This document shows, piece after piece, positions 3,839-53,067 of a stretch of 64,000 nucleotides of DNA. Numbering within the stretch: position 1 is the first letter of the stretch; the number at the start of each line of letters is the position of its first letter. The notes beneath the pieces were generated by a model, which saw only the letters and a program-made list of their open reading frames with translations, was not told the origin of the DNA and ran no database searches. Position numbers and translations under genes: made by a program. The DNA is from Ophelia neglecta (Eukaryota): the NCBI GenBank assembly GCA_965285935.1, contig OZ260661.1:47554001-47618000 (forward strand), given 5' to 3'.

Positions 3839-6800
3839 GTTTGTTTTAATCAAACAAGATAATTGCAATTTTACAGTCAGCTGTCCATGTGTTTTTATGT
3901 TGATCTTATTACTGTATTTCAAAAATAGGTTTTGGTGAAAGTGAAAGGTGACGGCACTATAGAGAGACTGACTAGTAAGTACACAAGTACAAGAAATAGG
4001 TAGTCAACTCAATCTCATGTATTGGTTGCATAGTTTATTATATTTTTATTGCATACTATTTGCGGAAACGTGAACTTGTTACAAATTAAGGTCTGTTAGA
4101 TTTTGTATCATTGTGAGAGAACAACAAACGATATCATATTATGACGGTTACTAGTATAAGCACTGTTATGGCTTCAAGAACACAATGATCTTATTTGGAT
4201 TGCTGCATAAATGTATTGCGTTTGGTATGTTTATAACGCAAGAACCCCCCCCCCCCCACCCCCCATTTTTTATATATCATTTCACCTTTGTCATATAAAA
4301 TTACCAAGATTCGTGCTGTATAAGCATGTGACAAGACGCGCGAATTTTAGATTAACACAAAGGATTTTTTCCACGAGACCTGCATGCTGTCACTCCTGCT
4401 GATGCTGTCACGTAATTCACATTTGTACTCCCACCCCCTTCAACAAGTCCTACGTTTTTCTCCTGTTTGCCCTTTACTGGTGGTTCCTTATACTACTTCG
4501 GGCCGTTTTAATGGATCATTCTTGATAAATGATTTTGCTTTGTCTGCCGGTTATCCAATCCCGTTTATTTTATGTTTTCAGCTGATAAACGTTGGTATTG
4601 GGCATTTGATGATGAGGCGCCAACAGACGATAATCCAATGAGTCTTAATATTACAACAATCGGGTCGCCCTCTCCCCGAGTTGAGGCCGGTAAAAGCCGG
4701 AATTCATATAAAGTGGACGCTACTCACTCCTACGAGATTCCTTTCTCACAGTCATGCGTTGCTGCTGTCAATTGCAAAAATGGATACACCGTCGCATTTT
4801 GGATTCAGGTAAAAAATACATTGAAGGCTCTTTTAACTTATGATGTCCGATTAAAGTAAACTCTGCATTGATTGTTTTTAATCTTAATACAACTGTTCTG
4901 TTTAAAAGGTGCCCGGTGACCCGTCAGGAAACCAGATTGTGCTAACTTCAGGTGGTGAAGTTTCTCAATACGGAGGATTTGCGGTTGAACTTGACGGAGA
5001 CAATCGTTATATTACAGTGAAAGCAACCGACTTATGGCGAGACTATCAAAATATTTCGTCCCCCATCGCCAATGGCACTTGGACCCACATAGCTTTTATT
5101 GTGGACCCCGCCATGCCTGGCATCCAATTCTGGAACAATGGAACCTACGTCGGGTAAGAAATACCAACTTAAAACTGGGTAATTTAAAAAGATGGATAAA
5201 TGAATTAAGGTCTTTGTTTTGGGTTAAAACATACATACACTTTCATATTGAGTAATTCTTGATATTACCAAATGGTTTCCCCGTGTGAAAATGCTTCGTA
5301 TTAAATAGCATCATAATCTCTAGATGTAAGATTCAACGACTAAGCATTAAGGACATCGAAGCATATATGTATTTTGCACTCAATCCTGAAACATTTAACA
5401 TAAAATGTGTGTTTCTGTTACTACAGGTACCAGAACCTTACGATTGGGCGTGGTACCCCCCTTACCAAGTACCTTGATAAGCTCTACTTAGGTAAGAGTA
5501 ATCTGGGTACATATAGCACCAGCGATTTCTGGATCGATGAGTTACATATATGGGAAATGGATGCCAGTGTTGGGCAAATACTATATCTGTACGGTAGGTT
5601 GAGCGTATTACGCACATATATCCTGAATATATTACCTAAAATTGGGCCCCTTAATTGGGCGACTGGGATGCAGTGCGGTAGGGCGAGGGGGAAGGGGGTA
5701 AGGCTAATGCACACAAGATGTATAATGCATCAAACATTTACAGATAGGCTAGGGACAAGCGTTTCACCAAATAAAGTATGTTCTATATATTATTTAAAGT
5801 GACGAATAGCTGGTTTTAAATATTTTCACTTAAAAACTTGAAAGTTGATCTATTCAGTGCAATCTAACACAAATATATTTCAGAATTACCGAAGACCAGT
5901 TATTGACAATTTTGACAGTTATACCATTGTACCAGTTTAACCATTGCAAATAACGGTAGTTTTCAATTGTATCAATTTTGTATTTGTGTAACCCTTCTTA
6001 ACCACAGGCCTATCTGCGGAATCGACGGAGCACCAATTTAAGTTAGATTTTGATTATATTTACGAGAACAATCTAATATCGGGAGGGTTTTTGGCACGCG
6101 TGGTGGCAGGCACAGTTAAACAGATACGGGGACGATATTCGAAGGGACTTGAGGTCACTCAAGATTCGGCACTTCACATAGGTGAGCTATTCTAATATTT
6201 ATCCAGACAGCAGTGTTTTTCGTCCAAGATTCCGAAAATCTATCTGATCAGATATGATTTGACCTGTGCATATGATGTTTTCAGGAACTTTCCAAAACTG
6301 TATCCAATACAAGCAGACGCCAGGTCCGCCCACCGAAGACCACTGGTGTATAAATGGGTTTAACCTTGACTTCTGGATCAAGATTGAGTCACCATTAAAT
6401 TACAACAATGAAAGGTAGGCTTAATTGTTTAAGTGTGTTAAATTTTAAAAAGGGAACAAAGCGTGAGATATATTAATTTCATATGCAAACTCGACTAGTG
6501 TCTTTCATAATGTTCACAACCTGCTCTGCCTAATATATAAGGTAAACATTGATCATTTTAGATACATACTCGGAACAGTGGATTTACTGAACGATTTTAC
6601 CAAGTCTGGATTTATGCTCATGCATCAGCCACAGCATGGATGCGCGCTAAATTTTACTGTTAGGACACAAGAATTTTACCAGCACATAAGATTCAAGTGT
6701 GATTACAACGCTTGGTATAAATTTGGCATTGGCTATCATCCAGCGGTCGGTGGCTATTACAGAGCCACCACCGAGCGAAGGTTTTCCCAAAGATATGGAA

Positions 6801-9800
6801 ATAAAATTGAAAACCTCTTCACCATGGCCAAGGTGTTCGTAACAAACTTGTATAGTTTTACAAGTCCCAGCATTCTTTATCTCGGTAAATACCAAAATAT
6901 TCTCTTAAAACACAACGAAAATATACGCGTATAAAACGTACAAACGGACGAGTTCAGTGTTATTGCACAATCGTTTTTAATTGTAAACAATTAAAGTCTT
7001 GACAGGACTTTAATTACTTTAAGATTGAAGATTCCAGGAAAAGTCTAAATCCTTTTATTACATGTAGAACGCTTCTGAATTACGTTTGAAATTGGCATCA
7101 ACACCCTAAAGAAGAAGTGATTAGGGTATATTGAACTAATATGAATTCTCATAATGGGAGTACGTTTTATTTCCAAAACATAATGATTAGAATAAAGGTT
7201 TATTATTAACATTGCAGGTCATCAAACAAATGGAGCTCACTTCTCTATAGATGAATTGTTCATATCAGGGATAATTATTTCAACAACCGACTTGGTAAAA
7301 TTAGGTATATAAGAAATCAATGTGGTTTGTGATGTTTTTCTTCAGTACAGTAATATGAGTAGGAAATCAACATTCAAGTTTTATATAAACGGAATTTGTT
7401 TAACAAAACACTCATCAGTCATATCTCCGTCTGTCTAATTACCATTGTTTTTGCACACTTTCATTTAAAGTTTAATCACGTATCTATTATACAGATCCAA
7501 TACATCGCTATATATGGAGGTACAGAAATACGGGCAGCAGAGAGGTTAGCGTTGTCAAAGGTCCATATAACAGGTTTTCTGCCACGCTTACTTGGATACA
7601 CAGAGGTTGGTCTGATTCCAAAGTGAAAAGTTACCTGACGAGACTTTCAGACGCGGTACGAATGAAAATAACTACATAATTATATATATTTACATATGAC
7701 ATTCATATTAATGGCATAAGTATTTTATGTGTGTGCTCTCTTTATAATTATTTACATACATGTATGACAGCTATAGGAGAATGGCTAAAATAAATGTAGA
7801 GAAAAGCGATATATAAGTGACTATAAGAAGTGTTTGTATACTTTCCACCAAAATAAAGACCCAACAAGTGAAACTTATAATACCAAATCGTAGCAAATCT
7901 CATATCTATTTGATATGAAGACAGTTGAACATCATGTAATTTTTTCATTGAATCGAACCAAATGAAGTCATGATTTGCGGACACCGCTGGATTTTAACGA
8001 TGAATATTGCAGTTGTATTGCAAATGCTTAAATTTTCCCCAGATTACCAAGTGTGGGTTTTGAAATTTATTTCTCAATTTTTCAATTGTAGCCTATAACG
8101 GATTTCTGTATGTTACAGAGTTTTTATTTCAATGGAGTGAATGCTTACGGGCGATACCGAAAAGACCAGATGTCGTCTGCCTCATGGCGAGATGTCGAGT
8201 ACAGCCGAGGTTTCAGTCTTCGCTTCAGCGCCTACCAAATTGGTACTCCAGCCACAGTCTCCAAGGCGTACTACATGGACTCGGGTGGTATTACGGAAGA
8301 AGATTGGGGTTTCTGTGTTTACTATGACTCTGGTTTTCTGAATGTTGTGGTGAGCACAAGTCGGTATGAATGGCGGCAACTATTGCCTTGGGGATTCCAT
8401 CAGTGGATTTATTTTTCGATGAGCTGGTATCCTGATCTCGGAATGGAAGTTTTCCTAAACCACTGGAGCCAGGGACTATTTACAAACAAAACAAAAAGAG
8501 CCAATCCTCAAAACCGCCCTTCTCAGTCGTCCGAGTATTGGTACTATGGAAGAATCGAGTCCTATCAAGGGACACTTGATGACGTATTGCAGCCGATGTA
8601 CATAGAACACATCGTTTACCATGACAGGGCATTCGAAGAACCATATTCCTTTTATAAAACAGGTGATCAATTATTCCAGGTATCTTAGTATTCGCATTTC
8701 ATAGTTTTAAAACTTCCTTTTTTTCTTTAGAAAGAATGTAAAACGGCTGCCTTGAAATCGATTATTTGTTTACTGGTAGGGTGAAGTAAGCATATTCGGC
8801 CTCCCTTTTTGTCAATTTTGCATTCTGCCACGCGGGCAGAGTTCCTGGTTTGCATTATGTTTCCAATCAGAATGTTATTTATAAACACGAAATAAATTAT
8901 CTAAAAATGCTCATAGATACCAAATATTGTTATTCATGAAGATAGTTTGATACCCCAAAGTTAAAATATCAGGGTGTCTTTAATGCAGCCGAAATCAAAG
9001 TTGGTTTCCTTTGTCAATAACTTACGCATATATCTTCTGCTAAATTTGTTGACATCTGACAAAACATGTTTTTTTTTAAATTTTACCAAGATATCGAAGG
9101 TAAAATGTATAAATACAGAAATATAAACAAAAACACTAGGGGGCCGGACTTTTGGTCCCACTAACCTATTTGATAATGTATTATTTCGTCCCCTCTGTAC
9201 CCAAATACTTAACCCCGTGATTATACTTGTGATTTCTGCATTCTAATGCGTATATTTGCGAAGTTCAAAGATGAATACTCAACGAGTTTATCCTAACATG
9301 ACGCGTCTTGAGGAGGGGTCTCATTTGATTAATTCCATCAGTCTCATTGAAAATCAATATCCAGTAGATGACTCTTGAAATAGGGTCATGTGGGTCTTCT
9401 TCATAGGCCTACTGATTATCATCATATATTACATGTGCTCCCGTCCAGTCTTGATGTAGCATGTCTAGCCATCTTATAAAGTGGACATCATTTGAATGCA
9501 ATAATCTATGCCCGCACTACTTGTTCTGTTCAGATTGAATAGGTAATTTCGATTTTATCTATTAAATCCGTCCTAATATTTATTTAATTATAAATCATCC
9601 ATTAAATCCGTTCTTATTTATTTTATCAGGCAATTTATTTAAACCAACCGAAAATTTTATATTATTGGCTTGTAACCGCCAGAAATGATAAAAATAATTT
9701 AGTTGTGTATAACACCATACTAAATGTAACATGTACTTATGTGGTGTCTCTTAGACAGCGACGATAAGATATTCATTATTACAAATATATAATAGCAAGA

Positions 9801-12800
9801 GATAATAAGATAGTTGGATGTTATATAGGGAGATATTAGGAAAGGTAAGTCAAGCTTTCTGTCGGCTAAAACTGGCCCTGTGTATTGTGTGCATCGCCTG
9901 CCCCGAGCTTGGTCGATTTGACCTATGACCGGTTTCTAACATTTCTATTGGTAGTGGAATATGTGGTACCAAACAGGCAATTTTCTCTCCTAAATAGGCT
10001 AATTATTATTAATTGTTTTCTTTGATCTATGAATGTGTGCGAAACAAATGCTTCAGGTGCGTGGAGCGACAATTCAGCAGGGAAGGAGGAGTTTGTAATA
10101 ATCCGGAAAGATACTATGTATACGAAAGGAATTGAGCATTGTTGAACTGAATATAAATTTCTCTGTTTTTTTTTAATCCCAGGAATGATATCTCACACGG
10201 CCCACCATGATGAATACTACCATACATGCAACGAAGGACCCAAGACTAAATTGTCTCGTCACATATGGAACGCGTCAAATGATTTTGACAATATGCACTC
10301 TGGTGCGTGGTTGAACGGAACGTTGCTGTTTCAGCTCTATGGCGAGGCGACACAAGTGTGGCGGAATGATTTCTTCCGGTATGCAGTAAGGCTTAATGGC
10401 AGTTCCCAGGTTGTTCGCTCAGATACGCTAGTCACTCAGTGCGTAAGCACACCAGGTGAGGAGAATATGGCCACTGATTCCATGCAAAATGGACAAAAAA
10501 TGGGGAGAAAGATAATCAAGCAAAATCCGAAATTATTAAATTATTTTACTCCGCAAAGTACCACTAAAAGTACAATCAAGCTGTTCTGGAGTAAATTAAG
10601 AATTATGGCGCTCTTTATTTCGACAATGCATTAATGATTGATTAAATCTAGAGCTAAATGTGCCCTGTGACCTTTTTTCGTAATAATGATTTATCAATGG
10701 GTGTATTTACTCGTCGTGCTTTATGATTTGATACATTTCCGTACATATTTCGTACAAATAAAGCTTACAATTCGCGCATGCATTGATATGCCTTTATCTC
10801 CTCTTCTCTTTGTGTTTAAGACATAATCTGAACCACTGATTTTTCAGAAAATACCTTCTTTCGTTTTTGAGGCCAAACATGTATCATTGTGTGTCTAAAC
10901 ATGCTTATTTCTATTCGTACCCAGTCTAGATGCGTTGGGATACAATTCCGTTCACAGCGGTAACAAATTCCGTAACACGTCTTCAAATTAATGTCTCCGA
11001 AAAATTACGGTTATCATTGCGTCTATGATCGAAAAAATTACATATTAAAAAATTTTGAACTCTTTCAAAAACATACAAGTATCCCAACTGAAGTCACCAA
11101 ACAAGTATTAGAGTAGCGGCTATAATTGCATCCGTTGTCGAATAACATTAATCTTAAAACAAGTTTAAGGTTAATCGGAAGTTTACAAAAATTCATTTGG
11201 AAAGGAAGATTCTAAAACATACATGGCCTATCTGTCACATTCCCTTCACTTATATTTGGGCGCATGCGCTTACGGGTTTTATACGATGAATGATTTAGAT
11301 GCCTTGTTCCGCGGACGCCAACAGTTTTGAGCATGCGCCAAAATGTCGGCATGCACCTTCAGTTTTAAAATACCGTGCGGCCACCGTGGAACTGCACCGT
11401 AGAGTCAGTCGGGGGAAATCCGGGGACAAACGTGTTTAACCGTAGTCAAAATCTGAAGCCGATTCGCCAAGGCTGGCTACGGATATGTCACATTGTTCCA
11501 CGGCTTCGCCCAGGTGCTGCCCGTTTCTGTCCCCCCTGTAGTAAGGTTCAGCCGATTCATGCCAAATTCCCAGGGTTGTGCCCCGGTTTATGTCGATTTG
11601 ATGCCGAAGGGCCGCTACGATTTCTCCCGTTTTTTAGCCACAGTTCGGCACAATGTGAACGATTCTATTGTCAAGTAAAAAAATTAAAAAGACTGACCTA
11701 AAGAGTGAAGCTATGTGTCTTAAATTTGTTCGTCCAGCTATATAATAAACATTAATTAACAATACAGATTCAATAGAAGCGTAATCAGCAATTAGAATAT
11801 TATATCTTATAACAGCTAGCAATTAGTTGCTTGGTGGTAACACGATTACAAGTATTAAATTGAATAGCGTGCACGCAAGTCATTTTATCCAATATCAGTA
11901 ATATACATTTAATGTTGATATTTTTACAGATGGTTGTTATGCACGAAACGAAATGATATCCTTCTGGATCAAACCACTCAATTTTCTGACCGTTCCTGAT
12001 GCACAAAAACAAACAATCCTTTGGATAGGTACGGCTAACATCACTGTTCTAGAGATCTTCCGATATAATGGCACAAACAAACTTGTGATCAGCGCCAAAT
12101 CGGAGCAGTGCACTATAAACATACCTTTGGAAGATAATGCTTGGACATGGGTGACTTTTTATTGGGCTTTCCGTAACTATGCCAACACTATTGGCGAGAT
12201 GTGGGTCAATTTACACACGATGAATATTACCGAGAGCGTGGTGTGCACGGCCACCACAAGAGAACCGATCACTGATATTACGGGACGTATTATTTTCGGG
12301 GGAGAACCAATGATGGATATAGATGGGCCATACCAGGCTTTTACCAACATGGATCTAGATGACATATTTTTGATGAGTACGTTCCATAATGTACACCCCT
12401 ATTATATGTCTTCTTCTGGGAAAACTTGGGGCAAGCGCAACAGAAATCAAAATTGGTTCTCGCCATTCCATTATCTATCAGGAACAAATGCAGTGGAGCT
12501 ATACGGTGAGTCACATAAGACACTTTCTATATGGTGGCCGGGTTCCCCTGGATATGTAAAACACACGAATATCTGCGTTGTCTCCCTTTTTTCAACCATA
12601 ACTTATAATTTAAATATAGTTTATTTGCTATGACTTTATTTACACCCCGGGACACGCATTTTAACTTATTTCTATGTTGTGTGATTTCAGCGGCACCCAC
12701 TTGTGTATCGTACGTTGACATAGGAAAATTTCCTTCCGACTTACCGAAACTGCGCATCAAACCATACGACAATACACCATTCTATGTTCAATGTCGTCTT

Positions 12801-13519
12801 CTCCCTGATACAGGTAAAACACTTTTGGGCATTTCACCAATTTCTCATTAGAATTAAATGGATTCTTTTGGCTGAAAAAACAATACCACAGTAGAGCCCA
12901 TACCTTCAAACATGTATTCATTGTGGGCATGATGTAGATACCCAAAAGGGTCTGACACTTATGCTTATATACTTTAATATACTTATACAAAAAGTATGTA
13001 ATACTGAATCTACATATTCCGGCCGTTCTATACTTCTACCCGGGATCCCATATTTGGTTCATACTGTTGGAGACGTTTTTATATCCATCATTGGGAAGAA
13101 ACACGTATAGTTACCACAGCCTTTTGACATTTTTATTTTCTGGACGGACATTAACTGCTTTGTATTTCACGTCTTTGACTTGTGCTGATAATCATTCCCT
13201 TTTGTATTTGGAAATCACGTCATCGGTCTTAAAGTTTATGATCCCTAGCCAGTTACAAGCCACTATACACACATTGCGTTAAGAACCTCTGGAATAGATT
13301 CATCAGAGTATGCATTGCGTATACATACATATGCGTGTACCATTTTTTGAGACCAGTCTTTCTCAAATGTTGACACCTTCTTATTTTAGACTTATATTAA
13401 GTGAAATGGAAATTTATGTCTTAGATCCTATGCGCATTACGTATTTTAACGAATTTTTGTGAACCCAAAGGGTCGTGCTATAATTATAATGCCGCGAAAT
13501 CAACCACCTTTTTTTTATA

Positions 13520-13566
<47 letters not shown>

Positions 13567-16500
13567 ATAAATTATAGTTTCGGCACTTTATACAGTCAGG
13601 CGGCTTCGTCTTAATGCCAGTGATAACTTCTCTTTAGAGGTGACTGAAACCGAGGTATTTATCAATCTGACTGCGATGAATAGAAGCCTGGCCGCAGAGG
13701 AGGGCAGACAGCCATTGATTGATGGCAACTACAGCTTGAACACAGATGCTCTCGCTGCTCTCAAGTCCATCTCAATCTCCTGTAAACAGAAGCTAAGCAT
13801 GTCTTGCAACGGAGACAGTAAGTAGATATCAAACACCTTGTTATAAATGTTATCATCTTAAAATAACTACATGTATCAATACTTCAAGTAACTAACTTCA
13901 CATAATTGGAAAAAAGCCACAGTTGACAATTGCTGAAAATGTGGATATGCCTACTTCTTTCAAACAAGACATACGTTCCAAAACAGGGGCAAAAAACGTA
14001 GCAGAACGATCATTTATATGTGTGTTTTCGATTTATTTTCCAGCTCTATTTAAAACGAATGTTAGTAGCTACTGGAAAGATAATGGAGGGGTCAATCGTT
14101 ACTACTGGGGCGGAGCCGATGACGACCATATAGGCAAGTGTGACTGTGGCGTGCGAGGGTTTTGTACCAACTCAACATCCAAATGCAAGTAAGTGTATGC
14201 TAAATCCATACTACAGTTATTGGATTCTAAAATGGTTTAACATGTGAATTAATACTTGCTACGTCATGATGTATCCTGGATAAGCCTAAGATGGGTACTG
14301 TATCTAACAGAAAAATAACCCAACAACAATTACTGGCCAAACGTGATGTAACGAGATCGCTTTGTTTAACCCCCTGAAGTAACAAAAGAGCCATTGTTAA
14401 ACTTATCACAAACCAGTTGATTGTATTACATAACCTTGTACAGGTCCTTTCTTATCCATTCCAACGTATAAGCATGATTTGATGAGTCTCACCAGATATA
14501 ACTCAAAACACCGTTCATGCTAATAGTGTGTTCTCTTTTGTTAATTTGGCTTTCCGTCGATCAGATTGAGTTCAGTGTCGCATCCCTTACCATAGATTCT
14601 AGCCCTCTATGATAAATAATATATATTTTCTACATAGCAGTGATAAGCTAGATAGATGTCCCTATGAATTTCATTACGATAGAGAAGGTGTATTTATTAC
14701 TCTGGTGTGTATTTTCTGGAGCGAGAGAACAAGATAACAACTGGGTTGAAATATTTCATTAAATGGAAAAAAGTAATATGTACAAAATTGAATTGATGTG
14801 ACCTGCTGAAAATATAGTCGCTTACACTTATTGTTACAAAGTTGTCAGTTATGTATAATCTGTCAAACATTACGTACAGTCTGAATTCATTAATATGTCA
14901 TGTGGAAGCAATGGTGAATATTACATAGTTTAATTGTAATTGACATATTTCCACGGTATTACATGCAACACATTACGGGTTACATCATAAATGTTGGTAA
15001 TTTTGTCGTGGTTATTACTGTCAAATCCGTTACTTTTCATATTATAAATTGATTAAAATTAGTCAGGACGCGTGTTAGAGTTAAAACGTATGTATGCTTC
15101 ATATACATACAATGGTGTTTTAAAGAGAGTTGCTAAGCTCCATCTGGATATTGTTTACAATAGAAAATGCGATGTCCTCGGAGTAACATTGAAGATGAGA
15201 ATGGTCATAGCTGGCTGATTCATATAAATATTCAATGCAAGGCATACATTTTATTTTATTTTTTTGTTGAACAAAATTCTGATGCAGTTCAAGTATAATC
15301 TTAAATTTCTTTTTAAAAAAAGAAGCGTATGCACAACAAATAGTTCTTCTATGGTATAGAGGGGCTATACATAAGAATCATGACACCAAGTTTACTCCAT
15401 TGAGGGATCCTTATTCATTACGGCCACTTAACACAACACTACTCATTTCCTCATTTCAACTATCTCATTCAGCTGTGACGGTCATGCCGGTTGGGACAAG
15501 GATGAAGGGTGGCTGAAAGAGAAAGATCGTCTGCCGGTCAAGTCTCTGTATATTGAATCTACACCCGGAAACATAGGCAACTGGACAATTGGCAATTTAA
15601 TCTGCCAAAACTTTGGTAACAAGCTCCTATTTCCATTGAGATCAACTTCCTCTGATATATCCATCACCCTTACTTGAATTAGTTGACTTAATATTTTGTA
15701 AAAAGAAATCAATTTTTATCTAGATGTCTTAATAGATATTTCATTTTCAAATTATGATTTAAGATCCAAATGGAATGCACTGGGCCTTGGACTCTTTTAC
15801 CATCTCGGAGGACCTGCCAGGTCGTATTGGTACGTTCCACGGCAATCAGAACACGGCAATGTTAAGAGCAGGGGTGTGGGAGTATTCGAAGGCCATTCAA
15901 CTCGACGGGACCACCAACTACCTCACCTTCCCTGCTTCCATCGAGGCATGTTTCACAGACGTAAGGCAGTGTTTGAAGGGATTTTCAACAGCCCTGTGGG
16001 TACGAGTACCTACCACGCTTACCAACATCGTGTTTGTATCCAACTTGAATACTGCAGGAACATCAGAAATGGGATTTAGTATTGGCTTGGCTTCTGGACA
16101 GCTGTCGTGTTCAGTAAGAGATACGACCAGCAAGTGGTCCATCTCCACGCTAGTGACAAGCGCTGTATGGATACATGTAGCGATCACGTGGAAAGCCTCT
16201 ACAGGGGTAGGTAGATAAATTTGAACACACATGCTTGCTCTTGAGTTTAACTAATTGTATCCAATTTCATTCAAAAGTATTAATCACGGAATAGTATTAT
16301 GCCATCCGCATTTGGATAACCATTTCTTCTTCTAGTTGCTATTGTACATCAATGGATACGATGTGAAGGCCCTCGGTGTGGTGGGGACTTTAATTGCCAA
16401 CAACGCCAGTGGGGTCACACCTCTCACAACTCTTCATGTTGGAAACGACCCAATGACATCGCTTAAAGCTAACGTATCACTGGACGAGTTCTGGTTTTCC

Positions 16501-19500
16501 CCCTATTATGTGTATATACCATCGATGGTTATGACCAGAGTAGATTGTAAGTTGAAAAAATAAAAATAGTACTTTAATTTTTGTCATAAGGTGTACTAAA
16601 CACGGTTAACACGGTTCAAATTCACCAGTAGATATAGATAAAATTTATCTTTTATTATTCTTTGTAGTTGCAAAATAAAGTGTGACGCATATACGTTCGT
16701 TTCAGTGCACCCTCGAATATACAGGACCTCATTCGACTACAGTACTCAGCCAGAGGATCTGTTGGCAAATCCGGAAATTTTCTTCGATTCGGCAAGCTCC
16801 CCAGTAGAAATTCCCGGTGTGGTATCTGGGGCTCTAAGACTGTACACCAGCACCACTACTATTGTTCCTATGTATAAAATATTCCATTATGAATGTTTAG
16901 GCCGACTCGATCTTTGTGAAAAAGGACTAACCTTGGCATTCTGGGCCAGGCTTCATCCTGATATGTGGACTGATACCGGAAATTATCATACATTAGTCTA
17001 CAACATGGGAGCTGCTGCGTCGAATCCCGGATTTCATATATACTTTAAAGGCAGATCGGCCTACCTTGAGATTAGGGACATGACGGCTGGAAGAAAACGC
17101 CTGTCAGCCTTTAACCTCCCTATTGAGAAGTGGTTTCATATTGCGTTCTCCTGGAAAACAGGGTCATACCCTTTTATATACATTAACAGTGTGTTGACCC
17201 CCACTACTAACAGTATGTCGTCGCAAATTTATTCGTCTCCTGCGCCATCTACTTCCATATTCTTCTGGGGATTCTCAAGTGTCTACAGCGCAGCAAACAC
17301 CCTCATGGACGTCGATGAGATGGTATTCCATGCGAGTGTTCAAGCAGTGTCGGTCATCAGAACGGAATACGGTAAATTACTTACGCCTTATCGGTAAAGT
17401 TCTTGGTCAAAATCATCAAAAGGTGCATTGTCCAAATATGACGTATCGTCGAATGATTTAGATATAAATTAAATATGTTTAAACATTACTCTAATTTATC
17501 ATTTAGATAAAGGAGTCAAGTGGTATCGATTCCCGTTTGACAACTCAAGTATTTATGGCGACACTAGACTTCAGAGTTCCGGGGATCTGATAACTATATT
17601 CGGTCGTGTGGCCAGTGCAGTTTATCTTCGAGGCAATTCATATCTCGAAGGAGTCATCCCATTTTACCACGAATGCCTAAGCAATCCAACGCGCTGTGTT
17701 CGTGGTTTCACAATTTCCTGTTGGCTTTTCATTCGACCTACCTTAAGCAACGGTACTATAGTGAGCGCGTACAATGCGGCGGGCAAACACGGTATAGAAG
17801 TGACATATACAACTAATTCCAGTGGTCTTATGGACATTAAAATCACCGTTGTAACGTCCTCCCAGAAGCACGAGTCAGTTTTTCAACTTCCTCCTCGCCT
17901 TTGGACTCACACCGCCTTCAAATGGGCAGCAGTCGGGGGATCCATTACCGTGTGGCTCAATGGAACCGATCGTTTGGTCACCACGTCCACGGTAGCCAGC
18001 TCAATGGTCTTTGAAGGCGATGTCAGGCTCGTATTTGGAACGGATGGGGAATCAAACACACATCACACTGATATGGCCATCGACGAATTCTACTTTAGAG
18101 AGAAACTTGAGACGGCATCTAGTATATACGTCGAATTCGGTAAGCCATGATATATACCTGTAGTTAAACGCCTAGTAGTTAAACATTACTTACATGTGTC
18201 CCCTACGAACGGGCTAACTTACTTTCACCTTTTGTGTTTCTTTAGTTCAGGGAAGAACAACAAACGACGATTTGTACTGGTCGCTGGATGGTTCTAATGC
18301 TGGCGGCCTACTTAATGATTCAGCTATACCTACGATTGCCCAGGATGTTACTTATGCTCTTGCTATAAAAAACAGCGGGGCAGTATTTGATGGCGCGACG
18401 AATTATGCAAATCTTGGCTCATACCCAGGAACATGTGTGACCCATCTGGAGTTTTGTCAACAGATTCACGTGAAGTTTCTCCTCCAGTTCAACGGCGAGA
18501 GAAATGGTGACCAATACATTGTTTCCAGATCAACCGCTGACGGTACTAATTCCGGTTTCTACATCCGCTACGCTAACCTAGAACCTACCCTACCTTTTCG
18601 AAGATACATTCAAGCGGGAGTTAAGCACAGCAGTCTGTTTTGGAATGTAGTTGTTCATATTGAAATGGGTGTATGGATGGCAATGGAACTGAAGTGGTCC
18701 CTAACTGGTGGGCTCGAGGTTTGGATAGATGGGATTTTGGCTGGTTCTGACATCACTCCAGCCTATGAAGCTGGACTCTCAGAGCGAACAGACACGACTC
18801 CACTAGTCCTAGGCAAATCAAACGCCGCCAACACAAATTATGCATTGATGAAATTGGACGAAATACATATCTGGGACGGAGCTATTGAACCTTCAAACGT
18901 CTCCTTAGCGGAAGGTATGCCTAGTCCCTTACACAGCAAGTATTGTTGTTATACGTTAAATTCAAATATAGTGTATAAATCCTTATCATTAGCTCATTTA
19001 TTCCGTTTGATAGTAAACCGGATTACTTGATTTAATCAATAATATCATTATATACAATTATATAGATCACTACCAAGTTGGTTGTTACCAGTCCATTGGG
19101 TCCTTTACCAAGACACTGACTTTACCTTCCTCGATGGATCCTTTGACATGTCGCACCTACTGCAACCACACATTCCGCTATGTCGGATTATCGGAAGGCG
19201 TGCGCTGTGTGTGTTTTCCGGATTTGACTGCCCTGATAAAGTTGTCGGACGGACTTTGTTCCACAGTCTGTCCTGGAACTTCCTATGTCTGTGGAAGCAG
19301 CACCAATATGCTGTATTTCAGTATTTACAGATCAACCGCCCATCTGCCCTTTCCTGAAATAATAGCCATAGAGAACTGTACCACCAATGTGACGGGGCCT
19401 TACGAACAATACGTGCTTGATTTTGATTTGGTTGACAAAAACACCCCTTTTACATTACAGATATTATGCAGGGTTGGCAACTTAATAAACTATAATTTTA

Positions 19501-22500
19501 CGATGGGGGATGCCACAGTAGCTGTAAACAGTGAGCTAAATACTCTCAACCACACGTATACAGCCCTGGGAGTGTACAGTGGTTTGACCACCCTCAGAAA
19601 TGAGAAGGGCACTATATATGTACCACACATAATTACTGCAACATTCCCTTTGTTTCCAATTCTAAACGTGTCCTTGGAGACTTCCCCAACAGAGGTGAAC
19701 ATGGCATCAGTCATCATGCTGAATGTTGGCAGTGGCAATGATCTGACTTGTGATATTGACTATGGGGATGGCATAACCGAGAGCTATTACAAGAAAGACT
19801 ATCAACCCGTCCACGCACTTGCCCACACGTACACGGTAGTTGGTGATTATGTGATAAAGATTATGTGCAGCAACCCAATAACTCAAGGAAACGATTCTGT
19901 TATGATTAGTATAGAGAAGCAGGTGGCTGCTCTTGCACTTGGCTTCAACAAAGTGACCAAATGGGTGTTCGAGGCAGATAGTAACAAAACTCTGTCCTGG
20001 ACAATCGTAGGAAGTCATCTTGAAACCTATCTCTTCCTTGACGGGGTGCAGGTACCTGTGGCATTTGACAACACATTTGCCACTCTTGATATCATCAATT
20101 TTAACTCAGTTGGTCCCTATCAGGGCTGGATCGTTGTGAAGAACGGCATATCCACCAGTGTTAACGTAACTTTTGAAGTAAGGGTGGAAAGACAAATCAC
20201 ACAAGCCTTCATACGAGCTCCAGCATACGCCGCAACAGGATTAAACTTCATTGCGCACGTTTTGATTCCACTCGGCTCCTACGCTGAGGTGAAATTCAGA
20301 TTCACCAGTCCAACATGGCTCTCAGCACATATTTCCGGTGATTTCATCAATGGACTGACTTCCTTTACAGGTGTATATCCGACACCAGGGGTGTGGACCA
20401 TGACCTGCCAGGTTTTCAACAACCTCACAACAGCCCCAGGTGTAGTCAACATAAGCCAGGTTATAATTGAAAATGGAGTGGCTGCATTGCTCATAGAAGT
20501 AAAGAATAGCACAAGTTTGAAGTATCCGATACCGGTAAATGGATCCCAGATCTTAGGTGCCGTTCCAGCAACAAATGTTCGTGTGATAGTACAGGCTACG
20601 CGCGGTGATTCAAACAGTACAGTTTTGTGCTATGATGATATCATCGAGTCGTTCAATCGAATCGAAACAGATTGTAACATAACAGAATCTGGCTGGTACA
20701 ATGTAAGCATCAGAGTGATGAATAATGTAAGTACCGAAGTGGTTTGGAGTAAAGTGGAATTAGGCGACAAACTGTCTACTGTTGAATACAACATTGAGAA
20801 AGCTCTCATATCGGCTGGACAGGTTGGTCAAGTTAATATACGAATAATGGATGGTATTGGTACTCGCGCATATGTCAATTTTGGCGACGGCTACACATCC
20901 CCTGGGGAACTCCTGGTAATCGGCCAGTTTAGTCCCGTACGTCATGTATACACACAATACGGTGACTACCAGATATCGTTGGTGGTAGACAATCAAATCA
21001 GTTCCTTGACAGCTGGATGCTCCTTAGCGTGTCTCATCGTGCAAGAAAATATTTCGGGTCTTGTATGGAGTGGACCCTTTGCATTTGAGTTTGGATTCCC
21101 AATTGTAATAACTTGGGTAAAAGTTACGGGGTCGCATTTGAACTATTCTCTGAAATTTGATGGAAAAGGCGTCACAACGTCTTCGAAGACGGCAAATGGA
21201 GGCTTTTGTAGCGTTTCTGCTATGCCTTGGTTAACTCTCGGTTTTCACACAGTATATGTGGAGACAGTCAATATGGTATCAGGTCCAACAAGTGCCAAAT
21301 CAAGTCTAGTCATCGTCAGAAGAATACGGAATTTCGTCATGCGTTTAGGCGTTACTGCTATTAAAACCAATGAAGTAACACGCTTAAACTACAGTATGGA
21401 TGATGCCACAAAAGTAACGGTCAACATCACCTCGTCCATAGACAGATTACTTGGGACAGCATATTACGAAGATGCTGCATCATTGAACCAACTACTCAGT
21501 TTCTCGTTTGGTGTTCCTGGTGTACACATTATAAATGGAGTGGCATCGAATCCCCTTGGTAGTGTTGACTCAGGGCCCCTAATATTGATTGTCCAAAACC
21601 CAGTTGTAAATGGAGATGTCGTAATTACTTCAGTCGATTTATTCACACTTCCGGTACAGTGTGTTTTGCGAATAAACCCTAACGATACCGTGCCAACAAA
21701 TATTAGTATTGTAGCAGAATTTGGGGATGGGAACCAAGCCACCAATATAGACTTCGTGGAGATGGACAACGAGACATTTGCTATATCACATATTTATCCC
21801 ATTGATGGTTACTACAACGTCTCATTCAGAATTTGGAATGATGTAAGTCTCTGGCAGTACGTGAGGCGGATCACTGTAGGAGTACCCGTCAGTAATATCT
21901 CACTTAGCGTTAATAAGGTAATATTGACCGTAAACGAAAGCCTCGTGATCAACGCTTCCGTCAAAGAAGGTTCAAACATGTATCTCACGTACGAATATGG
22001 CGATAACACATCTGAACTAGCCAGCGTATCGGCCGGAGAATTACACCAGACTGTCCATCGATATACAGAACCTGACGTTTATCAATTGTTGGTAGTGGCA
22101 ACCAATCCATTCAGCGAAGTTGAGAGAACTTTGTCTAATTTGATAATCGTACAAGAACTTGCTAGCGGGCTAAACCTTTCCATTGATAAAGACATCTTTG
22201 CTGTCAACGAGGTCGTCACCCTTATATGGAATATTGAAACCGGCACGAATGTGTCTTGTGTGGTATTCTACGCCGGAGTCCAGGTCTATCAAGCCCAGCT
22301 TTGTAATCACAGCGGTTCTGTTAAGGTTGATGGCAGTATGTCGCCCTCGGCCACATTCAATCCAGCCAAACTTCAGGCGTGGAATAAGGTCACGAACGTT
22401 ATTGAAACAAACATACTGGTGCAAGTGGAAAAACCAATGTATGGAATTGACCTGGTACCGCAATATGACATGTGGCCTTTGAGGGAACCTATAGAATTTA

Positions 22501-25500
22501 CAGTGGCAGTTGACGAGGGCTCCAACATCAACGTTACTTTAACTTTCAACAACAGCTCCCCGGAAGCATTTACTACATTTCCAAGTGGTGAATACAATCA
22601 TTCGTGGGTCAGTCGTAGATCGTTTGAAATCCCTGGCTTCATACAAGTGACGGCTTATGCGGTGAACCCTCTGGGCATGCTAACAACATCGAAGGTGGTT
22701 TGGATACAAGCACCTATCAACAATGGCCGAGCAGTAGTCAATGAACCTGATAATTACCGAACTGCAGCCCAGTTCATTATAATACTTAATGAAAATGATA
22801 CTGAACCTACCGATTTGAGCATAAAATGCGATCTTGGGAATAATGTCACAAAAACAGAGATACATTTCATGCATGTTATGGCTAACACCTGGGTGCTTAA
22901 CTATCAATACCAGAATGACGGAAATTACGATGTGCTCGTAGAGGTGAAGAACGATATTAGCCGGTGGAATTATACCAAAACCATCACAGTCGGAGAATAC
23001 CTAGCTAATGTCACTATCAGCGTGTCAGAATTAATAGTGTCCACGGCACAGTTTTTAACTGTTAATGTTGCAGTGCTTCGCGGATCCAACGCCCTGATGG
23101 TATACGATTTCGGTGAATCTGGTGATGTGATTGGCAGCAATATTACAAAGGGCGAGGTGAAGGAATTGCAGTATATGTACACAAATCCTGGTGTATATGC
23201 ACTAGAGGTCAAGGTGTGGAATGTCTTCAACCAGCTGATCAAAGAACACCACAGTGTCATTGTCGCCTTTGATATGGTCAGGGGACAGAAGTTTTCAACC
23301 AGGAAACCAGTATATGCTATCGGTAAGTGAGGTGAAGGGTAAATCTAATTCTTGAAATTTAAAGCCTTCGATATGCGATGTAAAACAGGTCCACCATCGA
23401 CTTAACTTTGCGGTTTTGTTAATCTTTCAGATGAGGATGTATACGTAGACTGGCACGTTCCGATGGGAACTAACATCAGCTGCTCTGTAGAGTTCAAAGG
23501 GACTATTCTATATGCTACCGACATGTGTAACAATACTGGTTGGTGGATGTTTCAAAGAGATAAATTACCGAAAGAAATTGGAAACTACACTGCAAGTATA
23601 AAATTATGGAACAAGGTGACTAGGTATCAGTGGCTTTACGCCAACATCAGGATTGAAAGAACAATTTCAGGATTGGCAATTGTCCTGACTCATCCCTTCA
23701 GGGCTCAGAATCAAAGCTCATCTTTTGAAGTTGTCCTGCGAGGAGGTTCCAACTTTAATCTAGAGGTGTTTTACAGTGATGTTTATACACGACAAAGCGT
23801 GTGGTATGCAGGCGATCAAACAAATGTTAGTCAGACAACTTCTAGAACTTACTATGTAACTGGAGATGTTTTCATCACAGCCCGCGCTACAAATATTTTA
23901 ATGACGGTTGAGTCAACTGCAATTCTCGCTATACAGGCTGTCGTTGAAGGCTTATATTTGGTCGAAAAAAACACAACTACCTTTGAAATCCCAGTTTATA
24001 TAACAATTCAGCAGAAAGCTGGCCTGCTTACGCCAACACACTTAATAATCGCGGTGGACTGGGGAGATGGTTCTCAAACAATACACGATGATTTCAGTTT
24101 GAGTGCAACAGGAAACGACACACTGGAACACTATTATGGTCGAGACGGATATTACCTGGTTCAGCTCTTAGCATTTAATAACATAAGCAGACAGAATTTA
24201 ACATCTGTTGTCAAAGTAGGAGAGGAGATCTTGAATTTTCAAATTGAAGCGTTGAAAACAGTGATGCAGCCAACCGCGAGATTTAGTGTCTGCTTCAACC
24301 TGACTCATGGGTCAAATGTTAGCGTTTCCACAGCGTTCCAAGCAGACGATACGATATATCTGGATGGCAAGTTAAAGCCGTACTCCAAACAATGCGTTTT
24401 CTATAGCTACACGACACAAGGAACATATACATTAAACGCTACTGCTCAAAATTCATTTAGTACTATAGAAGAGCAACTGGTCATTATTGTGGAAGAGCCA
24501 ATAGCGGGCCTGAAACTACAGCTTCCCAGGGGACTTTTGGCCAATGACACCTCGCATATAACGGTGCTTTGGTTTTACCTTGGTATGGATTATTGCGTGC
24601 TTTTGGACCTTGGTGATGGTGGCGAAAAGTATGTATATGGAGTGTCTGACTGCGAAACTAAACACCCGGACCATGTTTATAGGCAAGCAATGCCCGAGGA
24701 AAATTCATTCTCCATAACTCATACTTTTAAGTACGTTGGAACGTACGCGGGAAACCTGACTGCATATAACAGAATATCAAGGGAAGTCGTCTCTAAATAT
24801 CTAACGGTCATCCTCTGTGAAAAGCCAATTGCTAAACTTAACGGGCGAGGGAGTTTGCCTTATTTCCCAGTTCATTTTTATCAATCGGAGAACATCACAC
24901 TGGACGCCAATGTCATTAATCCGTGCACTATACCATGGAATATCAGTATGAACTGGACCGTCGAAGTGTGGCCAGACAACAAAAGTAAATATTTTCACAG
25001 CTTCGAACAACCAAATGCGCCAGTTTTGCCTATACCGCCGCGCACATTCCCATATGGTGTCGCAAAAGTCACGTTTTACGTCAAAGTGGGGCCATTTTTC
25101 GGAATTGAAGACACCGATTTCAAATACATCCGAATCATTCCCACACCAATTGTTGTGCGGATCAAAGGGAATAAGGCAAGGGCGGTGCAAAAAGGTAAGG
25201 GAATAGTTATCGACGCTCGTAGCGCCACCTATGACCCTGACGACCCAGAAGACAAGTCCTCGCTCGGATTCAGCTGGAAGATTAGGCTCGAAGGTCAGCG
25301 TAATTGGTCAAACCTATTACCGAGCGATACGCACTATGTGGCGAGGAAGAAACGCTCGTTGAGTGATCTGTCAGGCGGAATCCTGCACCTTATTGACTCT
25401 CTGCCTGAAGGCCTGATAGATATATTGGTGACGGTGACAAAAGGCACTAAACTCGGTTCGTTCATACAAACGGTGCAGCTGACGTCGGGTGTTGTTCTAG

Positions 25501-27222: not shown

Positions 27223-27257
<35 letters not shown>

Positions 27258-52300: not shown

Positions 52301-53067
52301 GGGAATGAACAATGTGAACAAGACTTAGCCCGCTTTAGGCTAACATTATATATAACAACGAGAGGCTTTAGGCTCCGATTTGGAGGTTTTGGTACTAAGC
52401 GAGGGGAGCTGATGATTTATTGCTTCTTACAATATGAATAGTGCCTCAATCTTTTATCTTGTCTTTTTTTTAAAATCACTGTTGTAAGGGGCCCCTACTA
52501 GTATATTATAGAAGCACTTTAATGTATTAAGGTATCCCCACCCCTACCCCCTCCCCACCCCCAAAATATTGATCAATTACGATGCTAGCTAAATTGATAC
52601 ATACGACAAAAAGAGATCTCAAGCACTGGAGTAGTTCTATACGCATTTTATATCTCTGTCTACGCCGCAAAATTCGTTTATTGGAAAAGTTTATTTACTT
52701 GCGCCAATAAGAGGACGACAGTTAGCAACCTTTTGGATAGAAGCCTTTACAGGACTTTGCAATTTCGCTCCAGCATTGAAAGTACGTGTTAAGCACGGTA
52801 AAGCACCACTGTTGGTCACGAAACTGCCCTGGCACCACTAGTCTTCTGGCATAGAATCAATACAGCCATGCAAACATGAACACTCGTCAGACTAGTCACT
52901 CAAGTGAGCTGGCGCACGTTCAGATGACTCCACTTGGTCGTGGCGCCTTCACTCCATTGAGGTAAGAACTTTACGGTGACATATGAACAACTCCAGGCTG
53001 ATGGTGTCACGCTCTTTGATTGAGACTGGCTACTCTGGAAGAGTTCATTGCCATTGACTTTGTTACC

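What the first reader, a model, noticed from the sequence alone, without database searches (positions are those of the whole stretch)
12691..15615. Caspr/neurexin-IV fibrinogen-like module embedded in a polycystin
The ORF track shows only fragments because the module is split over four small exons. Spliced, it gives the diagnostic YYWGG..KCDCG..C..KCNCD..W.KDEGWL..KDRLPV..IGNLIC string. As in Caspr, it lies centrally between two LamG blocks (4+4 here, 2+2 in Caspr), but I see no flanking EGF or discoidin domains. It is bounded by phase-1 introns, consistent with acquisition by exon shuffling.
Basis: partly seen in the sequence, partly recalled or inferred. Interest (0 to 1): 0.75.

Follow-up and report, generated by a model that had tools for sequence, protein, structure and literature searches.

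The report
Caspr-type module inside a giant polycystin
Four small exons inside a giant polycystin-like receptor gene of an invertebrate animal encode a cysteine-rich domain of the kind called "fibrinogen-like" in Caspr/neurexin-IV, which is an unusual domain combination but is built from known parts.

Summary

I searched them exon by exon and never joined them.
- Exons 3 and 4 match neurexin-4 of Lingula collinearly, at residues 739-776 (E 1e-7) and 785-828 (E 3e-8). They also match a profile of 35 family members (hhalign probability 97% and 96%).
- Exons 1 and 2 match only weakly, but in the right order.
- All ten family cysteines are present.

The host gene is a PKD1/REJ-type polycystin: Laminin_G_3 blocks, WSC, PKD, REJ, GPS and a PKD channel.

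1. The module family is large (1031 cluster representatives) and is shuffled among TSP1, EGF, SRCR and VWD proteins. The window's copy is no closer to Nrx-IV than to the others.
2. A high-confidence model of a family member matches the fibrillar procollagen C-propeptide (COLFI, Z 16.4) far better than true fibrinogen domains (Z about 6-7).
3. A paralogous polycystin on another chromosome carries the same cassette, so the fusion is old.

The 3' boundary intron is identical to that of the host's own Nrx-IV gene.

No RNA data were on offer, so inclusion of these exons in transcripts is inferred. Interest is modest.

The parts
12691..12813 (+). Module exon E1 (phase 1 in, phase 1 out). It encodes ..APTC...LRIKPYDNTPFYVQCRLLPDT, with Cys 1 and 2. 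This is the start of the domain, equivalent to 'SC..Y.IDPDG..PF.V.C' of the family.
   Evidence: Splice sites were read. The match to the family profile is weak but in the right place (hhalign columns 55-75, P 0.007; hmm nodes 73-92). PFYVQC aligns with PFKVVC at residue 652 of Lingula neurexin-4 (E about 1). The C8 paralog is 47.5% identical over 40 aa.
13638..13817 (+). Module exon E2 (phase 1/1). It encodes VTETEVFINL...NYSLNTDALAALKSISISCKQKLSMSCNGD, with Cys 3 and 4. It holds the 'C.Q.I.Y.C' motif that is shared with COLFI.
   Evidence: hhalign places it at columns 108-138 (P 5e-4, probability 31%). hmmsearch gives nodes 125-154 (E 5e-5). Local phmmer hits 6 of 150 family proteins at E<=0.01. 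There is no BLASTP match to Lingula neurexin-4.
14044..14188 (+). Module exon E3 (phase 1 in, phase 2 out). It encodes LFKTNVSSYWKDNGGVNRYYWGGADDDHIGKCDCGVRGFCTNSTSKC, with Cys 5 to 8.
   Evidence: It matches Lingula neurexin-4 at 739-776 (E 1e-7, 38% identity). hhalign gives 96.9% (P 1.7e-10). Local phmmer hits 97 of 150 family proteins. Paralogs in the same genome lie on C8 (51%, E 1e-10) and C2 (47%).
15473..15615 (+). Module exon E4 (phase 2 in, phase 1 out). It encodes (N)CDGHAGWDKDEGWLKEKDRLPVKSLYIESTPGNIGNWTIGNLICQNF, with Cys 9 and 10. The family's 'FGDTG' is replaced here by 'IESTPG'.
   Evidence: It matches Lingula neurexin-4 at 785-828 (E 3e-8, 42% identity). hhalign gives 96.4% (P 1e-9). 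Local phmmer hits 68 of 150 family proteins. The donor is at the same codon and phase as in the host Nrx-IV gene.
4533..12506 (+). Upstream ectodomain exons. They include one clear Laminin_G_3 block (4533-5799) and two to three weaker LamG-like blocks (8092-8685, 10146-10631, 11902 to about 12377/12506).
   Evidence: Pfam PF13385 hits 4906-5154 at E 1e-6. A home-made profile of the downstream blocks hits 4533 (1e-8), 11902 (2e-4), 8092 (2e-4) and 10146 (0.12). Pfam is blank for the last three.
15764..19027 (+). Four Laminin_G_3 blocks directly downstream of the module.
   Evidence: Pfam PF13385 scores E 2e-7, 5e-6, 2e-9 and 1e-6. The blocks match each other by BLASTP.
19017..36206 (+). Polycystin-1-like body of the gene: WSC, PKD repeats, REJ, GPS, polycystin domain and PKD cation channel.
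   Evidence: Pfam hits: WSC 1e-7, PKD 1e-32, REJ 7e-21 and 3e-10, GPS 2e-4 (22.2 bits against a cutoff of 22.5), Polycystin_dom 3e-27, PKD_channel 6e-19 and 2e-8.

Best explanation
The four exons encode one extracellular, disulfide-rich domain of about 197 residues. It belongs to the family best known as the 'fibrinogen-like' domain of Caspr/neurexin-IV.

By predicted structure, that family has the fold of the fibrillar procollagen C-propeptide (COLFI). COLFI is a distant relative of true fibrinogen-related domains.

The domain is an integral part of the N-terminal ectodomain of a giant PKD1/REJ-type polycystin. The order of parts is: LamG_3 blocks, this module, four LamG_3 blocks, WSC, PKD repeats, REJ, GPS, multi-pass membrane part with a PKD channel domain.

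The cassette was assembled by shuffling of phase-1-bounded exons from the large pool of such modules in invertebrate matrix and adhesion proteins. This happened before the duplication that gave a second polycystin with the same cassette.

Inferred mechanism (not shown): together with the LamG blocks, the module forms a Caspr-like adhesive or ligand-binding head on the part of the receptor that lies N-terminal to the GPS cleavage site. Binding of a matrix, cell-surface or gamete-coat partner is then passed on to the polycystin membrane part.

The loss of the family's 'DPDG' and 'FGD' motifs in both polycystin copies suggests an altered binding surface, or a mainly structural (spacer) role.
For: Exon structure and phases.

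Homology:
- E3 and E4 match neurexin-4 of Lingula (XP_013388250.1; name) at 739-776 and 785-828, collinear, E 1e-7 and 3e-8.
- All four exons align in order to the profile of 35 members.
- The window has all ten of the family's cysteines.

The family includes real Nrx-IV:
- A paralogous module from the same genome (C2, 47% identical to E3) was used as the query.
- It hits three neurexin-4(-like) proteins at E about 1e-18 to 1e-17.
- The hits fall exactly between their EGF and their third LamG.

Fold:
- The AlphaFold2 model of member P0078 with alignment A1 has pLDDT 88.6.
- Foldseek finds procollagen III/I C-propeptides at E 8.5e-11 over 232-238 columns. FReDs reach only E >= 6e-4 over about 116-130 columns.
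- VIA-align gives Z 16.4 (185-187 residues aligned, rmsd 4.0) for COLFI, against Z 7.2 or less for fibrinogen-related domains.

Sequence links to both superfamily branches:
- The profile hits fibrinogen gamma at 1.4e-5 and collagen I C-propeptide at 4e-5.
- Pfam COLFI matches 12 of 35 members and Fibrinogen_C matches 10 of 35.

Host gene is a polycystin.

Same cassette in a second polycystin on C8: LamG, E1-E4, LamG, then PKD/REJ.

Constraint: in DNA contigs of one sample, the only variant within the 591 exon bases is synonymous (12734 T>C, CCT to CCC). There are 36 variants in the other 3810 bases.
Against: - No RNA evidence. No RNA run was on offer, and the runs laid were DNA contigs without spliced joints. 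Inclusion of the four exons in the polycystin mRNA therefore rests on splice signals, phase compatibility and the paralog.
- E1 and E2 match the family only weakly.
- Pfam and PDB sequence searches of the single exons are blank. The same is true of the host's own Nrx-IV module exons.
- The structure is that of a family representative, not of the window's module. I did not build or fold the joined peptide.
- The invariant Gly and near-invariant Asp of 'FGD' are missing in the window.
- The function is pure inference.
Confidence: 0.78

Rival explanations
1. One reading: the module was copied from the host's own Caspr/Nrx-IV gene into the polycystin by exon shuffling.
For: - The 3' boundary intron is at the identical codon (the fourth after the last Cys) and phase (1) in the polycystin and in the host Nrx-IV gene at C1:110.98 Mb.
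- The two first internal introns have the same phase and lie within about 3-5 profile positions of the Nrx-IV introns, in variable loops.
- The two TSP1-type copies on C2 and C5 lack these introns. Their reading frame runs from the middle of the domain to the 'GDxG' motif, where it appears to end (donor not mapped).
Against: - In sequence the window's exons are not close to Nrx-IV. The host Nrx-IV exon ranks 72nd of 148 for E3 (15.6 bits) and 56th of 157 for E4 (14.8 bits). The best E4 hits are bivalve multi-module EGF/VWD proteins at 37-40 bits.
- Nrx-IV has no intron between its EGF and the module, and none at the E3/E4 site.
- No EGF or discoidin domain came along.
- The event predates a duplication with 51% residual identity.
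Confidence: 0.12
2. The four exons are a separate nested gene for a small secreted fibrinogen-superfamily protein lying in an intron of the polycystin. This would be analogous to the fibrinogen-like v-Themis genes that lie in the first intron of the PKD1-like s-Themis genes of Ciona.
For: - An in-frame ATG at 12630 is followed by a hydrophobic stretch (MTLFTPRDTHFNLFLCCVISA|APTC) just upstream of E1.
- If the donor at 15615/15616 is not used, the frame stops 20 codons later.
- Ciona offers a precedent for pairing a PKD1-like receptor with a fibrinogen-like partner at one locus (passages read in PMC9265791).
Against: - In the C8 paralog the frame upstream of E1 is closed by a stop 8 codons before the acceptor and has no ATG.
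- The hydrophobic stretch coincides with the polypyrimidine tract of a good acceptor.
- The exons are on the same strand as the polycystin, whereas v-Themis is on the opposite strand.
- Both outer phases fit the flanking LamG exons in both paralogs.
Confidence: 0.04
3. The module is a canonical fibrinogen-related domain (FReD), that is, a ficolin/tachylectin-like glycan-binding lectin head.
For: - The family profile hits fibrinogen gamma, angiopoietin-like proteins, tenascin and tachylectin-5A over its N-terminal part (E 1.4e-5 to 0.04).
- Pfam Fibrinogen_C matches 10 of 35 members.
Against: - These matches cover only profile positions of about 26-143, never the YWGG..CACG..CNCD..LPV half.
- Structural similarity to FReDs is Z 5-7 with about 100-125 residues aligned, against Z 16 with about 185 residues for COLFI.
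- The single exons give no Fibrinogen_C hit.
Confidence: 0.04
4. The exons are decaying or unused remnants (pseudo-exons) that are no longer part of any protein.
For: There are no transcript data. E1 and E2 are very diverged from the family, and the 'FGD' and 'DPDG' motifs are lost.
Against: - All four frames are open, with intact consensus-like splice sites.
- All ten cysteines are kept, in both paralogs, after divergence to about 50% identity.
- The only variant inside the exons is synonymous.
Confidence: 0.03

Closest known systems
Fibrinogen-like domain of Caspr / CNTNAP / neurexin-IV (e.g. neurexin-4 of Lingula anatina, XP_013388250.1)
   Same: - It is the same domain family: collinear matches of E3 and E4 (E 1e-7 and 3e-8).
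- It has the same ten-cysteine pattern and the same YWGG / C.CG / CNCD / LPV motifs.
- It lies between LamG-type domains.
- It has the same 3' boundary intron as the host's own Nrx-IV gene.
   Different: - The host protein is a polycystin, not a single-pass adhesion protein.
- There is no discoidin domain and no EGF before the module.
- The flanking blocks are Laminin_G_3, not Laminin_G_1/2.
- There are 4(+/-)+4 blocks instead of 2+2.
- There is an extra phase-2 intron inside C-N-C.
- 'FGD' and 'DPDG' are not conserved.
- The window's copy is not specially close to Nrx-IV within the family.
Fibrillar procollagen C-propeptide (COLFI, PF01410; PDB 4AE2, 4AEJ, 5K31, 6FZV)
   Same: - It is the best structural match of the family representative over nearly the whole domain (Foldseek E 8.5e-11; VIA Z 16.4).
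- It shares the 'Y.IDP...V.C' and 'Q.I.Y.C' sequence stretches.
- Pfam COLFI hits 12 of 35 members.
   Different: - The module is not attached to a collagen triple helix.
- No trimerising stalk is visible in the window.
- Sequence identity is only 16-20%.
- The single window exons give no COLFI hit.
Polycystin-1 family (human PKD1/PKDREJ, sea urchin REJ proteins, coral REJ protein)
   Same: [quoted passage not shown] A similar series (WSC, PKD repeats, REJ, GPS, PLAT) is described for a coral REJ protein (passages read in PMC4890752).
   Different: The N-terminal head of LamG_3 blocks plus a Caspr-type module is not among the architectures described in the passages I read. It was not found by my three literature searches on this point. 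A PLAT domain was not detected in the reading frames I scanned.
Ciona s-Themis (PKD1/PKDREJ-like) and v-Themis (fibrinogen-like) gamete self-recognition pair
   Same: A PKD1-like receptor and a fibrinogen-superfamily module are encoded at one locus.
   Different: - In Ciona they are two genes on opposite strands, with the ligand gene inside the first intron. Here the module consists of in-frame, same-strand internal exons.
- Homology between v-Themis and this module was not tested.

Membership tests
Caspr-type 'fibrinogen-like' module (domain family) | Significant, collinear sequence similarity to the domain of genuine neurexin-IV/CNTNAP proteins | tested here: met
   E3 matches Lingula neurexin-4 at 739-776 (E 1e-7). 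E4 matches at 785-828 (E 3e-8). E1 and E2 are weak or absent. The profile of 35 members gives 97% and 96% for E3 and E4.
Caspr-type 'fibrinogen-like' module (domain family) | Ten conserved cysteines and the Y..C.Q....C / W / C.C / CNC / LP / C-terminal Cys columns | tested here: met
   The invariant columns of A1 were compared with the exon translations. All the cysteines, Y, Q, W, D and LP are present. The invariant G and near-invariant D of 'FGD' are not.
Caspr-type 'fibrinogen-like' module (domain family) | Fold of the family (COLFI-like) | not tested
   Only a family representative (P0078) was folded. The window's joined peptide was not built or folded, by the rule on spliced models.
Caspr / CNTNAP / neurexin-IV (protein family) | Architecture discoidin (F5/8C) - LamG - LamG - EGF - module - LamG - EGF - LamG - single TM | tested here: not met
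   This architecture was seen in part (F5/8C, four LamG stretches, one EGF just before the module) in P0148, P0150 and P0132. The window gene has no F5/8C or EGF hit. It continues into WSC, PKD, REJ, GPS and a PKD channel.
Polycystin-1 / REJ family | REJ domain followed by a GPS motif | tested here: met
   REJ scores E 7e-21 and 3e-10. GPS scores E 2e-4 (22.2 bits, just under Pfam's cutoff of 22.5), with CACNHLTFF in the sequence.
Polycystin-1 / REJ family | Polycystin domain and PKD cation-channel region at the C-terminus | tested here: met
   PF20519 scores 3e-27. PF08016 scores 6e-19 and 2e-8.
Polycystin-1 / REJ family | PLAT/LH2 domain after the first membrane span | tested here: inconclusive
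   No PLAT hit was found in the 10 reading frames scanned downstream of GPS/REJ. Small exons were not scanned.
Fibrinogen-related domain (FReD, PF00147) | Match over the whole domain, including the P-subdomain | tested here: not met
   The single exons give no hit. The family profile matches FReDs only over its N-terminal part. Structural Z is 5-7, against 16 for COLFI.
Fibrillar collagen C-propeptide (COLFI, PF01410) | Pfam match above the gathering score, and position at the C-terminus of a collagen chain | tested here: not met
   The window exons give no hit. Members of the family match weakly (12 of 35 at E<=0.1). There is no collagen repeat in the window gene. The resemblance is at fold level only.

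The most novel reading that the evidence does not exclude
The LamG / COLFI-like / LamG head is a Caspr-like adhesion ectodomain grafted onto a GPS-cleaved polycystin channel-receptor. This would give a receptor in which cell-cell or gamete-coat adhesion directly gates a polycystin. The fibrinogen-superfamily module would be the cis-fused counterpart of the trans partner seen in the Ciona s-Themis/v-Themis self-recognition pair. Two diverged paralogs in one genome would then be candidate gamete- or tissue-recognition receptors of a broadcast-spawning invertebrate.
Probability: 0.08. Interest if true: 0.7.

Novelty: new variant of a known kind. Interest (0 to 1): 0.35.

Why it matters
Polycystin-1-type receptors are defined by their membrane-proximal REJ/GPS/channel part. 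What they sense is set by a variable N-terminal head. A head made of about eight LamG-type blocks with a Caspr-type module is a domain combination I did not find described. It suggests an adhesive, matrix-binding or gamete-coat-binding role.

There are two side results of wider use.

First, the 'fibrinogen-like' domain of Caspr/Nrx-IV belongs to a large family that Pfam does not model. Pfam was blank on the host's own Nrx-IV module exons, and family members matched it only weakly. The family has more than 1000 cluster representatives and is shuffled among TSP1, EGF, SRCR, CUB and VWD proteins of marine invertebrates.

Second, the predicted fold of that family is that of the procollagen C-propeptide, not of a lectin-type fibrinogen domain.

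Neither point changes a major question. The finding is a sound annotation, not a surprise of principle.

Tried and rejected
Searches that found nothing:
- Pfam on the four single exons and PDB sequence searches with E3 and E4 were blank. This proved uninformative, because the host's own Nrx-IV module exons are equally blank in Pfam.
- Pfam and PDB with the 147-aa C2 exon gave only chance-level hits.

GON domain. The ESM Atlas gave 'neurexin-4-like' as its first cluster (0.91) and clusters with GON/COLFI annotations at 0.87-0.88. I used these as leads only. GON was not among the 25 of 38 Pfam families shown for the 35 members, so I dropped the GON idea without a direct test.

Literature. Five searches found no paper describing a polycystin with LamG blocks and a Caspr-type module, and none linking COLFI with Caspr. 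These searches cover open-access text only, and supplements were not opened.
- For PMC4890752 and PMC9265791 I read passages only.
- All other papers I saw only as search listings.
- The Gene3D superfamily assignment of CNTNAP and collagen C-propeptides, and the Ca2+ site of COLFI at 'DPNQGC', are recalled from memory. They were not checked and are not used as evidence.

Whether the architecture exists outside this genome therefore stayed unchecked.

Expression. No RNA run was on offer. The three runs laid are DNA contigs of one sample.

Earlier notes of this scan. It added nothing that I did not test.

Nested gene. I considered a nested independent gene and rejected it.

Full report
WHAT IS THERE

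The window is part of a 762-Mb animal genome (G000:C1:47554001-47618000). Its G+C content is 29-44% in 2-kb windows.

Three-frame translation of 12600-15750 and the DNA at the boundaries show four open segments flanked by AG acceptors and GT donors:
- E1 12691-12813
- E2 13638-13817
- E3 14044-14188
- E4 15473-15615

Together they are 591 nt, or 197 codons. The intron phases are 1 (before E1), 1, 1, 2 (inside the codon for the Asn of C-N-C) and 1 (after E4). The exon that follows (from 15764) takes phase 1. The LamG exon upstream offers phase-1 donors at 12377 and 12506.

THE HOST GENE

Pfam scans of 20 larger + strand reading frames give these hits:
- Laminin_G_3 in 4906-5154 and in four successive blocks at 15763-19027.
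- WSC and PKD repeats in the 1437-aa exon 19017-23327.
- PKD and REJ in 23406-25514.
- REJ in 26430-26786.
- A GPS motif at 30125 and following (22.2 bits, just under the cutoff).
- Polycystin_dom and PKD_channel at 34178-36206.

This is a PKD1/REJ-type polycystin.

The four downstream LamG blocks are similar to each other. Upstream of the module the picture is weaker:
- One block is clear.
- Two are weak (E about 2e-4 against a profile of the downstream blocks).
- One is marginal (E 0.12).
- Pfam finds nothing in the two weak blocks or the marginal one.

No EGF or discoidin hit was seen.

WHAT THE MODULE IS

I searched exon by exon and left out the joined step. Pfam and PDB sequence searches of the single exons found nothing.

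A six-frame search of the window's own genome with E3 found three further places:
- One on C8 at 51% identity (E 1e-10).
- One on C2 at 47% identity (E 0.002).
- One on C1 at about 96.35 Mb at E 2 (chance level), which I did not pursue.

The C2 copy lies in a single open frame of 147 aa, after at least nine thrombospondin type-1 repeats. I used this natural, unspliced piece to query 1.84 billion cluster representatives. The result was 1031 hits at E<=0.001 and 488 at E<=1e-10.

Among the 150 hits listed, three have the architecture F5/8C, LamG x2, EGF, [match], LamG. Their sources name them neurexin-4 (Lingula anatina, XP_013388250.1) or neurexin-4-like (Gordionus, Paramacrobiotus). The match (E about 1e-18 to 1e-17) falls where Caspr proteins carry their 'fibrinogen-like' domain.

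The window's own exons link directly to this family:
- E3 aligns to Lingula neurexin-4 at 739-776 (E 1e-7).
- E4 aligns at 785-828 (E 3e-8).
- PFYVQC of E1 aligns to PFKVVC at 652 (not significant alone).
- E2 gives nothing.

Against a profile of 35 small family members (A1) the four exons align in order:

| Exon | Profile columns | hhalign probability |
|---|---|---|
| E1 | 55-75 | 5% |
| E2 | 108-138 | 31% |
| E3 | 150-189 | 97% |
| E4 | 196-239 | 96% |

(the same order was found with hmmsearch).

All ten cysteines of the family are present in the window. The invariant Gly and near-invariant Asp of 'FGDTG' and the 'DPDG' stretch are not. They are also absent in the C8 copy.

THE FAMILY IS BROADER THAN CASPR

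Other hits are:
- TSP1-rich proteins (named SCO-spondin or SCO-spondin-like).
- A fibrillin-like EGF protein with four copies.
- SRCR, CUB/Xlink and VWD/SUEL-lectin proteins.
- Bivalve EGF/VWD proteins with six or seven copies.

Stand-alone copies are often auto-named 'contactin-associated protein-like 2'.

I ranked the window's exons against the stored family proteins (the 150 listed hits and fetched cluster members) and the host's own copies. Nrx-IV is not the nearest:
- For E3 the order is the C8 paralog (51 bits), then many members at about 26-28 bits. Lingula neurexin-4 ranks 52nd and the host Nrx-IV exon 72nd of 148.
- For E4 the best hits are Pecten and Mercenaria multi-module proteins (37-40 bits). 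The host Nrx-IV exon ranks 56th of 157.

FOLD

The A1 profile hits fibrinogen gamma (1.4e-5), collagen I C-propeptide (4e-5) and angiopoietin-like 3 (5e-5) in the PDB. These hits cover only its N-terminal 60%. Pfam COLFI matches 12 of the 35 members and Fibrinogen_C matches 10.

An AlphaFold2 model of member P0078 with A1 has mean pLDDT 88.6, with the domain part above 93.
- Foldseek finds procollagen III and I C-propeptides first (E 8.5e-11 to 1e-7, 232-238 columns). Fibrinogen-related domains follow far behind (E 6e-4 and weaker, about 116-130 columns).
- VIA-align gives Z 16.4 (185-187 residues, rmsd 4.0 A) for COLFI, and 7.2 or less for tachylectin-5A, ficolins, angiopoietins and fibrinogen.

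The 'fibrinogen-like' label is therefore right at superfamily level. The nearest solved fold is COLFI. This was shown for a representative, not for the window's own peptide.

AGE AND ORIGIN

The C8 locus is a second polycystin with the same order of parts: LamG blocks, E1-E4, LamG blocks, then PKD/REJ exons. In it E2 is split by one more intron. The cassette therefore predates a duplication that has since diverged to 47-51% identity in E1 and E3.

The host's own Nrx-IV gene lies at C1:110977147-110991810. Its module is in three exons. In profile coordinates:
- The 3' boundary intron is identical in the two genes: the fourth codon after the last Cys, phase 1.
- The first two internal introns have the same phase. 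They lie about 3 and about 3-5 positions apart, in variable loops.
- The E3/E4 intron is absent from Nrx-IV.
- Nrx-IV has no intron between its EGF and the module.

The TSP1-type copies (C2, C5) have a different layout. Their open frame runs from the middle of the domain to the 'GDxG' motif, where it appears to end. I did not map the donor.

Gene structure thus hints at kinship with the Nrx-IV copy, while sequence does not. A specific origin from Caspr remains unproven.

IS IT EXPRESSED AS PART OF THE POLYCYSTIN?

No RNA run was on offer. The three runs that hold the stretch are contigs of one DNA sample. They cover introns and exons alike, with no joints at the predicted splice sites.

Of the 37 single-letter differences listed, one falls in the 591 exon bases (12734 T>C, synonymous) and 36 fall in the other 3810 bases. 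This is weak evidence of constraint.

A nested-gene reading is formally possible: there is an in-frame ATG at 12630 with a hydrophobic stretch, and a stop 20 codons after the E4 donor. It has a loose precedent in Ciona, where fibrinogen-like v-Themis genes sit in the first intron of PKD1-like s-Themis genes, on the opposite strand (passages of PMC9265791). However, the C8 paralog has a stop 8 codons upstream of E1 and no ATG. I rate this reading low.

HOW IT PROBABLY WORKS (INFERENCE)

The module and the LamG blocks form the distal head of the ectodomain, N-terminal to the GPS cleavage site. As in Caspr, this arrangement points to protein or glycan binding at the cell surface or in the matrix. 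The polycystin body would pass such binding on to the membrane part. Loss of the DPDG and FGD motifs suggests a changed binding site or a scaffold role. None of this was tested.

UNCHECKED
- Occurrence of the architecture in other species.
- The PLAT domain.
- The exact donor of the upstream LamG exon.
- Any link to the GON domain.
- Supplements of papers were not opened.

VERDICT

The finding is an unusual but intelligible domain combination built from known parts. I class it as a new variant of a known kind, with interest 0.35.

Noticed in passing
G000:C8:82072000-82152000 (loci L005-L008, L011-L013, L017, L018): There is a second giant polycystin-like gene with the same order of parts: LamG blocks, Caspr-type module, LamG blocks, then PKD/REJ. 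Its introns hold long proline/histidine-rich tandem repeats and reverse-transcriptase-like frames. Its module exon E2 is split by an extra intron.
   Followed up: partly
G000:C2:32026693-32031753 (loci L003, L010, L014) and G000:C5:60165620-60168277 (L020): Two genes have thrombospondin type-1 repeats followed by a Caspr-type module that lies largely in one exon. The C2 gene is surrounded by a tandem array of frames that look like serine beta-lactamase-like (LACTB-type) genes. That label is from reading the translations only.
   Followed up: partly
window 41850-42816: There is a tandem array of 19 copies of a 51-bp unit (91% matches). It is open in several frames on both strands, so it produces long spurious ORFs.
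   Followed up: partly
window 38339-39400 (-) and 46835-47842 (-): Two similar minus-strand exons encode major-facilitator transporters (Pfam MFS_1, E 4e-27 and 3e-30). They are probably a tandem gene pair downstream of the polycystin.
   Followed up: partly
window 53020-54453 (+): A 478-aa open frame weakly matches the rhodopsin-family 7TM receptors (7tm_1, E 2e-7, 31.1 bits against a cutoff of 30.5).
   Followed up: no
window 14570-14646 and 13505-13580: In the intron after E3, contigs of all three runs (one sample) replace 75 bases with 26 other letters, which is a structural variant. Contigs also break at the (TA)-rich microsatellite in the intron before E2.
   Followed up: no
family-wide (alignment A1, model m18bb3b6f99a4): The Caspr-type 'fibrinogen-like' domain has no Pfam model of its own. 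The host's own Nrx-IV module exons give no Pfam hit. The predicted fold superposes on the procollagen C-propeptide at Z 16, against about 7 for fibrinogen-related domains.
   Followed up: yes
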